DNA of 64,000 bases from the NCBI RefSeq assembly GCF_902713615.1, contig NC_052162.1:118168574-118232573 (forward strand), written 5' to 3'. Shown in pieces: positions 38,224 through 39,180 of this stretch (its first letter is position 1; every line of letters begins with the position of its first letter). Below the pieces are notes generated by a model. That model was given only the letters and a program-made list of their open reading frames with translations, was not told the DNA's origin and ran no database searches. Position numbers and translations under genes: made by a program. Source of the stretch: Scyliorhinus canicula. Lineage: Eukaryota.

Positions 38224-39180
38224 GAACATTAGGAAAGAGACCATTCTTTTAGCCAGACAAATAAATGTGTCAAGCTGAGGAAGCAAAGGATGTCAATGTC
38301 TCTAAGGGAGAGAGAGACCTGGGCCAAGCTTTCCAGAGTCTGCACCCTCCCTGGATTCACTTCCTTTCCCTTCAGTTGCTGTAAGTCCCCAATGTCCCCC
38401 CAGAATGAGAAAGGAAATGGAAAGGGGGAAACACTGAGCTCCCAGATGAGGAGGAAATTTTGGTCTGAAACTCATTGTCCAAGCTCCGAATTGTGACGTC
38501 ACAATAGAGCCCTGCTGAATCAACCAATAACAAATCACTCTGCTCCACGGTGACGTCTGCGGGTTCCAGAGCGCAGTCCCGTCCCCATTGTTCCCCCTCC
38601 CCCGTCACCTCCTCCAGACAAGGTTTCCAGGCAACCGGCTGACGGCTCCCGCCAGAGCGAGAAGCCGCTCAGTGATCTCCCCCAAGGTCCGGTACTGCGC
38701 ATGTTCAAAGGACGGGGTAGGTGCGCATGTGCAGGGAGTTCCCGCCCCCTTGACCCACATGTCGAGGTATTGACCAATGGCAAACTGGGAGGACCGGAAG
38801 GACTCTTCTCCGCCAGCCAATCAGAGTTCCATCATTGTATGCCTGCGGAGTTTGGAAATTGCGCTTGTTGACCTGCTCATTCCTGCCCAGCAAAGCTGCT
38901 GCTCCTCACTCTGAATGAGCTTGAGCATCACACCTCCTGTCTCCAACATCTGTGAGTAAAACACTTTCTTTTCTCCCCCTTTCCATTTCTTTTCTCATTC
39001 TCACCTTCAGTTGATCACTTGCAGCAACTGAAGGGAAAGGAAGTGAATCAGGGAGGGTGCTGACTCTGCAAACCTTGGCCCAGGTCTCTCTCTCTTAAAG
39101 ACATTGACATCCTTTGCTCCCTCAGCTTGACACATTTCTTTGTCTGGCTAAAAGGATGGTCTCTTTCCCAATGCTCACAG
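38224..39180. promoter_or_regulatory. Head-to-head (bidirectional) ZNF promoter cassette B: inverted ~230-bp arms around a CpG-rich core
   Basis: 38224-38450 is the reverse complement of ~38935-39178. The core has TGACGTCA, GCGCATGTGC, CCGGAAG and several CCAAT. Plus-strand donor CATCT|GTGAGT at 38952. Confidence 0.8.

What the first reader, a model, noticed from the sequence alone, without database searches (positions are those of the whole stretch)
38224..39180. Palindromic bidirectional ZNF promoter cassette in which only one arm keeps the GT splice donor
Seen: a CpG-rich ~480-bp core (CRE TGACGTCA, NRF1-like GCGCATGTGC, ETS-like CCGGAAG, CCAAT) flanked by ~230-bp inverted arms, each being a non-coding exon-1 end plus an intron start. 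The design recurs at 7550-8335 (second arm truncated) and 60880-61760. In all three, one side reads CATCT|GTGAG (7821, 38952, 61082) and leads to an open ZNF ORF. The other reads CATCT|GGGAG (8312, 38443, 61536) and leads to a pseudogene or no visible ORF. Established: NRF1/ETS/NF-Y motifs typify vertebrate bidirectional promoters. Inference: this cassette is the duplication unit of the family, and the GG side yields an unspliced divergent ncRNA or is dead.
Basis: partly seen in the sequence, partly recalled or inferred. Interest (0 to 1): 0.75.

Follow-up and report, generated by a model that had tools for sequence, protein, structure and literature searches.

The report
Mirror-image shark zinc-finger promoter, half dead
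This catshark DNA holds a shared on-switch between two back-to-back zinc-finger genes, copied several times, in which one gene of each pair has decayed and lost its splice signal; the layout is a familiar kind, but the mirrored flanks of the switch are unusually well preserved.

Summary
At 38218-39180 a 508-bp, moderately CpG-enriched core lies between inverted arms (209 bp, 87.6% identical). The design recurs at 7538-8344 and 60879-61782. All six donor positions read as reported: GT at 38952, 7821 and 61082; GG at 38443, 8312 and 61536.

It is the centre of a head-to-head pair of finger-only C2H2 genes made by an inverted duplication. At 38 kb the mirror homology runs about 3 kb, out to the finger exons. 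The arms are the last ~19 bp of exon 1 plus the first 230-290 bp of intron 1.

- The cassette never occurs without a gene, so it is not the duplication unit by itself.
- A fourth cassette (28641-29500) has a GT arm in front of a pseudogene.
- The window ends 2.2 kb past the third GG arm.
- Donor state against ORF integrity gives p = 0.11.

New here: the arms, dead-side ones included, are 90% alike, against ~75% for core, leader and coding sequence.

The scan has met this gene family and its promoters in other windows of this genome.

The parts
38218..38443 (-). Cassette 2, left arm. It is the start of intron 1 of the dead left-hand gene; the donor position reads GG (G at 38443).
38444..38951 (.). 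Cassette 2 core, the shared promoter plus both short non-coding first exons. The left half holds a CCAAT box (38524) and a CRE (38494). The centre holds the conserved block GTTTCCAGGCAAC (38623). The right half holds an NRF1-like site (38723), an ETS site (38794) and CCAAT boxes (38774, 38817).
38952..39180 (+). Cassette 2, right arm. It is the first 229 nt of intron 1 of gene 2, with donor CATCT|GTGAGT.
39355..40474 (+). Gene 2, exon 2. The acceptor TTTTTATAG|GA lies at 39355. The leader, made of decayed fingers, spans 39355-39712. The CDS spans 39713-40474 (253 aa, 9 C2H2 fingers, starts MEKPWKC).
36953..37738 (-). Left-hand pseudogene, the mirror copy of gene 2. The acceptor near 37738 is kept. 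A SINE sits in the leader at 37360-37515. The first finger carries a stop (MEEP*KC). The gene is cut after three fingers, where the tRNA-Glu array begins.
7538..7821 (-). Cassette 1, GT arm, leading to gene 1 (exon 2 from 4744, CDS 4387-3281, 368 aa).
7822..8311 (.). Cassette 1 core, in reverse orientation relative to cassette 2.
8312..8344 (+). Cassette 1, stub of the GG arm. It reads CATCT|GGGAGC and is cut about 33 nt into the intron by unrelated sequence. A repeat also present at 44.7-46.4 kb follows from 8525.
60879..61082 (-). Cassette 3, GT arm, with a 36-nt deletion and a poly-C run. It leads to gene 3 (exon 2 from 59890, CDS 59581-58613, 322 aa). This arm lies on the CRE/CCAAT side of the core, the opposite side from cassettes 1, 2 and 4.
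61083..61535 (.). Cassette 3 core, in the same orientation as cassette 2 (78.5% identity over 363 nt).
61536..61782 (+). Cassette 3, GG arm. Around the donor it matches the GT arms except for T>G at +2, and it has only 7 private changes in 227 nt. No finger sequence follows before the window ends at 64000.
28641..29130 (-). Cassette 4, GT arm (CCTCT|GTGAGT, G at 29130). It is interrupted by a SINE at 28741-28916 and a microsatellite expansion. It leads to gene 4, a pseudogene at 26265-27560.
29131..29500 (.). Cassette 4, decayed remnant of the core (CCAAT box at 29203, CpG o/e 0.69). The far side is not recognisable.

Best explanation
The cassette is the middle of an old head-to-head pair of finger-only C2H2 zinc-finger genes of the small-spotted catshark.

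An inverted duplication placed two copies of the gene back to back around one weak CpG-island promoter. The 'arms' are the mirrored last ~19 bp of the two non-coding first exons plus the first 230-290 bp of the two first introns. The pair, or one gene with the promoter, was then copied within the cluster; this window holds four cassettes.

In each cassette one member has decayed through a mix of lesions: a donor T>G at +2, a stop codon, truncation, or insertion of a transposon or other foreign sequence. The GG donor is therefore one lesion of a dying partner, inherited by descent at 8 kb and 38 kb. It is not a design feature.

The surviving member is read from the GT donor, across intron 1 (0.4-3.1 kb), into a conserved acceptor and a leader made of dead fingers. 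Translation starts at MEKPWKC.

By inference from the U1-PAS rule, transcripts that start towards a GG arm would be unspliced and terminated early.

Separately, the arms are a constrained non-coding element that is kept on both sides, whether or not the gene on that side is alive. This probably serves the promoter as a whole.

Shown: the anatomy, the homologies, the donor states, the ORF states and the excess conservation. Inferred: the order of events, use of the splice sites, the fate of divergent transcripts and the role of the arms.
For: - The mirror homology at 38 kb runs well beyond the arms. 38974-39179 matches 38429-38221 (87.6%), 39253-39481 matches 37835-37608 (73.6%), and 39585-39935 matches 37324-36976 (80.1%).
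- All 7 arms adjoin a core; none stands alone.
- Donor states are as stated. The acceptors are homologous in all five genes, including the two pseudogenes.
- The products are C2H2 fingers only. The product of gene 3 is on record in assembly GCA_902713615.2. The MEKPWKC start is also seen in a Mustelus protein, and TEKPWKC inside a Heterodontus protein.
- Dead partners carry several lesions each: MEEP*KC plus truncation plus a SINE on the left at 38 kb, and a SINE plus frameshifts in gene 4.
- The GG arms at 8 kb and 38 kb share +2 G and +6 C.
- Arms have a mean pairwise identity of 90.4%, against 74.5% for cores, 74.6% for leaders and 75.9% for CDS. Fisher p ranges from 1e-3 to 1e-10.
- Nearly all differences between arms are private to one arm, and none is shared only within a cassette.
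- Dead-side arms have far fewer changes than the leader tree's median terminal branch of 0.17 per site predicts: p = 5e-10 and 4e-6.
- PAS hexamers within 1 kb outward number 2, 3 and 1 on the GG sides, against 0, 1, 0 and 2 on the GT sides.
- The U1-PAS rule is Almada et al. 2013, as listed in the references of PMC11230626.
Against: - There is no RNA evidence at all. TSSs, junction use and divergent transcripts are untested.
- Only four cassettes could be read.
- Cassette 3 does not fit simple descent. Gene 3 is sister to gene 2 (support 93/96), yet it sits on the other side of the core. Its GG arm looks like a GT arm with a single T>G. This needs either a second, identical donor mutation or a rearrangement.
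- If the GG sides are simply dying, their strongly conserved arms need a separate explanation.
- With the shortest branch in the leader tree (0.057), the shortfall of changes in the cassette 3 GG arm is only p = 0.056.
Confidence: 0.68

Rival explanations
1. Selected directionality switch, a sharpened form of the first reader's idea. The promoter with both arms is kept as one functional unit. Loss of the 5' splice site on one side is favoured because it turns a two-gene promoter into one gene plus a short, unspliced, quickly terminated antisense RNA.
For: - The same T>G at +2 appears on opposite sides of the core in different cassettes.
- In the cassette 3 GG arm, one of only 7 private changes in 227 nt hits the donor; chance is about 0.06.
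- The dead-side arms and the dead-side exon-1 end (38444-38493, 90% identical to cassette 1) stay conserved.
- The GG sides carry slightly more outward PAS hexamers.
Against: - There are only two independent events at most.
- Dead partners carry many other lesions.
- Gene 4 died with its GT intact.
- The PAS counts are tiny.
- There are no RNA data.
Confidence: 0.17
2. The high similarity of the arms comes from gene conversion among family members, not from selection on a function.
For: - The arm differences form a star-like pattern with short private branches.
- Around the donor, the cassette 3 GG arm matches the GT arms except at +2. Overwriting by a GT-type arm followed by a new mutation would explain this.
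Against: - The two arms of one cassette are not more alike than arms of different cassettes (87.6% and 91.6% within, 92-94% between) and share no private variants.
- The adjoining core, the rest of the intron and the leader are not homogenised (70-82%).
- Conversion should also erase the GT/GG difference.
Confidence: 0.2
3. The cassette is a non-autonomous cut-and-paste transposon. The arms are its terminal inverted repeats, it carries a promoter, and it seeded the gene family.
For: - The shape fits: a 0.95-kb unit with ~0.2-kb inverted ends.
Against: - The termini are not sharp. Homology runs 60-215 nt beyond the arm in cassettes 1, 3 (left) and 4, and stops at different points in the others.
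- No target-site duplications flank the unit.
- The inner ends of the arms are exon ends with splice donors.
- No solo copy occurs in 64 kb.
Confidence: 0.03

Closest known systems
Vertebrate bidirectional CpG-island promoters of head-to-head gene pairs (NF-Y, NRF1, GABP/ETS and CREB site class)
   Same: - A core of about 0.5 kb between two outward-facing first exons.
- No TATA box.
- Conserved CCAAT, NRF1-like, ETS and CRE sites.
- CpG enrichment relative to the surroundings.
   Different: - Here both flanks are mirror copies of each other, because the partners are inverted duplicates.
- CpG enrichment is only borderline (o/e 0.56-0.67).
- Two-way initiation is not shown.
Inverted (palindromic) gene duplications with one decaying partner. 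The scan noted an example elsewhere in this genome, next to an MHC class I gene: an inverted copy of promoter and leader exon with a killed donor (s1-270786).
   Same: - Mirror copies of promoter-proximal exon and intron.
- The donor is destroyed on the copy that has no working gene.
   Different: - Here the whole gene was mirrored and the module was then re-copied within a large family.
- The mirrored intron starts are far better conserved than their surroundings.
U1 snRNP / polyadenylation-signal control of promoter directionality (Almada et al. 2013, cited in PMC11230626)
   Same: One side of a divergent promoter has a strong 5' splice site (GTGAGT). The other side has none, and has early PAS hexamers.
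   Different: - In mammals the asymmetry is a statistical property of unrelated flanks. Here it arose by a point mutation in one of two homologous arms.
- No RNA data are available here.
Lineage-specific tandem C2H2 zinc-finger clusters (mammalian KRAB-ZNF, teleost FiNZ)
   Same: - Fast birth and death of genes.
- Diverging finger arrays.
- A transposon-rich setting with many pseudogenes.
   Different: - No KRAB, SCAN, BTB or FiNZ domain is present; the products are fingers only.
- Amplification includes a mirrored promoter module.

Membership tests
Bidirectional promoter | Two divergent transcription start sites less than 1 kb apart | not testable with these tools
No CAGE or RNA data could be reached.
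Bidirectional promoter | Two outward-facing genes or first exons flanking one short intergenic core | tested here: met
   At 38 kb, the pseudogene (-) and gene 2 (+) flank a 508-bp core with mirrored exon ends.
Bidirectional promoter | CpG island with NF-Y, NRF1, ETS or CRE motifs and no TATA box | tested here: met
   The motifs are present and conserved in position in three cores. There is no TATA box. CpG o/e is 0.56-0.67 at GC 0.54-0.57, which is borderline for an island.
Inverted (palindromic) segmental duplication | Reverse-complement homology on both sides of a spacer, extending through the gene bodies | tested here: met
   A chain of inverted matches links 36976-38429 with 38974-39935 (74-88% identity).
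TIR (cut-and-paste) transposon | Sharp, constant termini and target-site duplications | tested here: not met
   The outer ends differ between copies and no direct repeats flank the unit.
TIR (cut-and-paste) transposon | Dispersed copies independent of the host gene | tested here: inconclusive
   None is present in the 64-kb window. The genome could not be searched.
C2H2 zinc-finger protein | Tandem zf-C2H2 domains with TGE(K/R)P linkers | tested here: met
   Pfam finds zf-C2H2 and zf-H2C2_2 in 9-12 stretches in all three ORFs.
KRAB-, SCAN- or BTB-ZNF | An N-terminal effector domain | tested here: not met
   Pfam finds only finger families. The ORFs start at the first finger (MEKPWKC), and the upstream leader has stops in all frames.
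Structured RNA or small-RNA gene in the arms | A significant fold, covariation or an Rfam match | tested here: not met
   z-scores are -1.55 and -0.65. None of 62 predicted pairs is compensatory. The best Rfam hit has E = 0.27, 17.9 bits against a gathering score of 60.
Functional U2-type 5' splice site | GT (rarely GC) at +1/+2 with a consensus context | tested here: met
   Four arms read GTGAGT. Three arms read GG, which fails the rule, and no strong alternative donor lies within ~450 nt of the GG position. Actual use was not tested.

The most novel reading that the evidence does not exclude
The mirrored arms (exon-1 end plus the first ~230 bp of intron 1, with no CpG at all) are a selected cis-element of the promoter that is kept on both flanks even where the gene on that side is gone. 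Loss of the splice donor on one flank is then a recurrent, favoured step. It makes the shared promoter one-directional while keeping the element, so the GG side is a functional promoter flank that gives only a short antisense RNA, and not dead DNA.
Probability: 0.15. Interest if true: 0.55.

Novelty: new member of a known kind. Interest (0 to 1): 0.3.

Why it matters
The locus shows, at base-pair level, how an inverted gene duplication creates a two-way promoter and how that symmetry then breaks down. In every copy one partner dies, and in the three copies where the decayed side can still be read, its 5' splice site is gone.

If the loss of the donor proved to be favoured and not accidental, this large shark gene family would offer many natural replicates of the U1/poly(A) rule for promoter direction.

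The strongly conserved, CpG-free intron starts are a concrete candidate regulatory element for a family of over a thousand genes (a figure taken from earlier notes of this scan, not checked here) whose control is unknown.

As it stands, the finding is a well-documented but ordinary case of gene-family birth and death.

Tried and rejected
The run list shows DNA holders in several studies, plus some runs guessed to be RNA that hold 0.18-0.25 of the words.

2. More loci. Exact-product look-ups failed for genes 1 and 2. Gene 3 was found in GCA_902713615.2 and a Mustelus relative in GCA_964213995.1, but no DNA was served because the files are too large. The cluster look-up was blank.

3. Protein word searches, with the whole protein and with residues 1-60, were swamped by generic multi-finger proteins. 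They gave no catshark transcripts. The third search was not spent.

4. RNA structure or a small RNA in the arms was rejected: no significant fold, no covariation and no Rfam family.

5. A TIR-transposon origin was rejected (no sharp ends, no target-site duplications). An assembly artefact was also rejected: the arms are 87% alike, not 100%; four diverged copies exist; and DNA runs from several studies hold the stretch.

6. Arm-to-arm conversion within a cassette was rejected, because no variant is shared only by the two arms of one cassette.

7. A metagenome scan for a conserved 34-nt stretch of the arm found nothing.

8. The findings index by sequence was blank, which means nothing.

The exons were handled separately and by reference.

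Full report
**What is there**

The stretch 38218-39180 has two inverted arms around a unique core. The repeat finder gives three adjoining inverted segments (38221-38315/39085-39179, 38308-38353/39049-39094, 38354-38386/39017-39049). blastn joins them into one 209-nt match at 87.6%. Alignments A1 and A2 show that the mirror symmetry runs inward to the donor position and about 19 nt into the exon (CCTCCTGTCTCCAACATCT).

The pattern CWTCTGKGAG occurs 7 times in the window against 0.88 expected.

The core between the two donor positions is 508 bp, GC 0.56, CpG o/e 0.59. The window average is 0.43, and the arms contain no CpG at all. The named motifs are present. The CCAAT boxes, the NRF1-like GCGCATGTGC, the ETS site CCGGAAG, a GGTGACGTC half-CRE and a central block GTTTCCAGGCAAC keep their positions in all three cores. 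I read that central block as RFX-like from memory; this was not tested.

**What the arms are**

The mirror homology at 38 kb does not stop at the arms. It continues as 39253-39481 against 37835-37608, 39523-39596 against 37594-37523, and 39585-39935 against 37324-36976. That takes it through intron 1, the leader and the first fingers of two opposed genes.

The right-hand gene has a good acceptor at 39355, then a leader made of decayed fingers, then an ORF from a conserved MEKPWKC (39713-40474, 253 aa). The left-hand copy keeps its acceptor near 37738. It reads MEEP*KC, carries a SINE in its leader, and stops after three fingers where the tRNA-Glu array begins.

Genes 1 and 3 have homologous acceptors at 4744 and 59890, and ORFs of 368 and 322 aa. 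All three products are C2H2 fingers only.

The product of gene 3 is on record in GCA_902713615.2, which I recognise as the small-spotted catshark assembly. A Mustelus protein starts with the same MEKPWKC, and a Heterodontus protein contains [14 protein letters not shown].

So the cassette is the centre of a head-to-head gene pair made by an inverted duplication. The arms are exon-1 ends plus intron-1 starts.

**More copies than reported**

A fourth cassette lies at 28641-29500. Its arm has a GT donor (CCTCT|GTGAGT, G at 29130) and is interrupted by a SINE and a microsatellite. Its core is decayed and its far side is lost. Its gene, 26265-27560, is a pseudogene with a SINE in the second finger and frameshifts.

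The inventory is therefore seven arms:

| Arm | Donor | What it leads to |
|---|---|---|
| Cassette 1, gene 1 side | GT | intact ORF, 368 aa |
| Cassette 2, right | GT | intact ORF, 253 aa |
| Cassette 3, left | GT | intact ORF, 322 aa |
| Cassette 4 | GT | pseudogene |
| Cassette 2, left | GG | pseudogene |
| Cassette 1, other side | GG | arm cut ~33 nt into the intron by unrelated sequence |
| Cassette 3, right | GG | undecidable |

The last case is undecidable because the window ends 2.2 kb after the arm, while the introns seen here measure 0.4-3.1 kb.

Donor state against ORF integrity gives a one-sided Fisher p of 0.11, and the arms are not independent. The association holds in this window but is not established.

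**Is the cassette the duplication unit?**

Not by itself. Every arm adjoins a core, no cassette stands without a gene, and homology between loci runs from the arm on into the intron and exon 2. There are no sharp termini and no target-site duplications, so a transposon with inverted ends is rejected.

**History of the donor states**

The GG arms at 8 kb and 38 kb share +2 G and +6 C, so they look inherited from one event.

Cassette 3 is different. Its core has the orientation of cassette 2 (78.5% over 363 nt), but its live gene lies on the CRE/CCAAT side. In cassettes 1, 2 and 4 the live or GT side is the NRF1/ETS/CCAAT side. Its GG arm lies on that NRF1/ETS/CCAAT side and, around the donor, differs from the GT arms only by T>G at +2.

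A tree of the leaders puts gene 3 as sister to gene 2 (support 93/96), with genes 1 and 4 and the left pseudogene unresolved. So gene 3 is a relative of gene 2 that now sits on the other side of the core. This needs one of two things: a second, identical donor mutation together with replacement of the old dead side, or a flip of the core by exchange within the short exonic part of the repeat. Four cassettes cannot decide between these.

**An unreported feature: the arms are unusually conserved**

| Segment | Mean pairwise identity |
|---|---|
| Arms | 90.4% (range 84.7-94.3) |
| Cores | 74.5% |
| Exon-2 leaders | 74.6% |
| First 270 nt of CDS | 75.9% |

Arm against leader plus CDS gives Fisher p between 1e-3 and 1e-10. 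The rest of intron 1 is 70-82% identical.

Between cassettes 1 and 2 the conserved block also covers both exon-1 ends: 88% at 38894-38943 and 90% at 38444-38493.

Almost all arm differences are private to one arm, and no variant is shared only by the two arms of one cassette. Arm-to-arm conversion within a cassette is therefore not the cause.

The dead-side arms are as conserved as the live ones. The cassette 3 GG arm has 7 private changes in 227 nt, where the leader tree's median terminal branch (0.17 per site) predicts about 39 (p = 5e-10). With the shortest branch (0.057), p is 0.056. The distal 150 nt of the left arm at 38 kb shows the same shortfall (p = 4e-6).

No RNA fold, covariation or Rfam family explains this. 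I favour selection on a promoter-flanking DNA element. Family-wide gene conversion remains possible.

**What could not be done**

As a result, start sites, junction use and divergent RNAs are untested. The statement that GG sides give unspliced, early-terminated RNA rests only on two things: the U1/poly(A) rule (Almada et al. 2013, as listed in PMC11230626) and small PAS counts.

The searches of the held paper library turned up no description of this family or its promoter.

**Verdict**

The structure is real and was accurately described. It is a mirrored two-gene promoter module of a shark finger-only ZNF family, in which one partner per copy has decayed and, where that side is still readable, has lost its splice donor. 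That is a known kind of thing. Earlier notes of this scan describe the same family and promoters in other windows of this genome and reached similar conclusions. The excess conservation of the CpG-free arms on both live and dead sides is the one point worth following up.

Noticed in passing
window 31973-36722: A tandem array of tRNA genes, with four Rfam tRNA hits at 31973, 33241, 34503 and 36651 on a ~1.26-kb repeat unit. The last unit abuts and truncates the left-hand ZNF pseudogene at about 36966.
   Followed up: partly
window 50008-53766 (-): An intact 1252-aa ORF with an endonuclease domain (Exo_endo_phos) and a reverse transcriptase, in a GC-rich (57%) block spanning 49.6-55.5 kb. It looks like a full-length, possibly young LINE. 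A second RT fragment lies at 16325-16813.
   Followed up: partly
window 60128-60454 (+): A short run of zinc-finger coding sequence on the opposite strand, inside intron 1 of gene 3. Another first-stage note describes it as a finger triplet fused to a Rex1 3' end.
   Followed up: no
window 19638-20934: A large minisatellite with a 25-nt unit (GTGTGTGTGTGACATGGCAATGGGA), about 48 copies, also scored as a 108-nt period. It has strong GC skew and produces spurious ORFs of more than 400 aa.
   Followed up: no
window 8525-11000 and 44696-46393: Two copies of a ~1.7-kb interspersed repeat (72-82% identical). The copy at 8.5 kb is broken up by SINE insertions at 9282-9640 and 10219-10695. It lies just outside the truncated GG arm of cassette 1.
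   Followed up: partly
window about 60785 and 28625 (-), distal end of the extended GT arms: In genes 3 and 4 a second consensus donor, ACA|GTAAGT, lies about 290 nt downstream of the first donor, at the end of the conserved block. Gene 1 reads GTAAAC there, and gene 2 lacks the segment. It may be an alternative first-exon end. These coordinates were read by eye.
   Followed up: no
window 38623-38635, 8099-8111, 61259-61271: The best conserved block of the core centre contains GTTTCCAGGCAAC in all three cassettes. It resembles an RFX X-box half-site pair; this is from memory and was not tested.
   Followed up: no
Nothing was laid and the places were not used in any later search.
   Followed up: no
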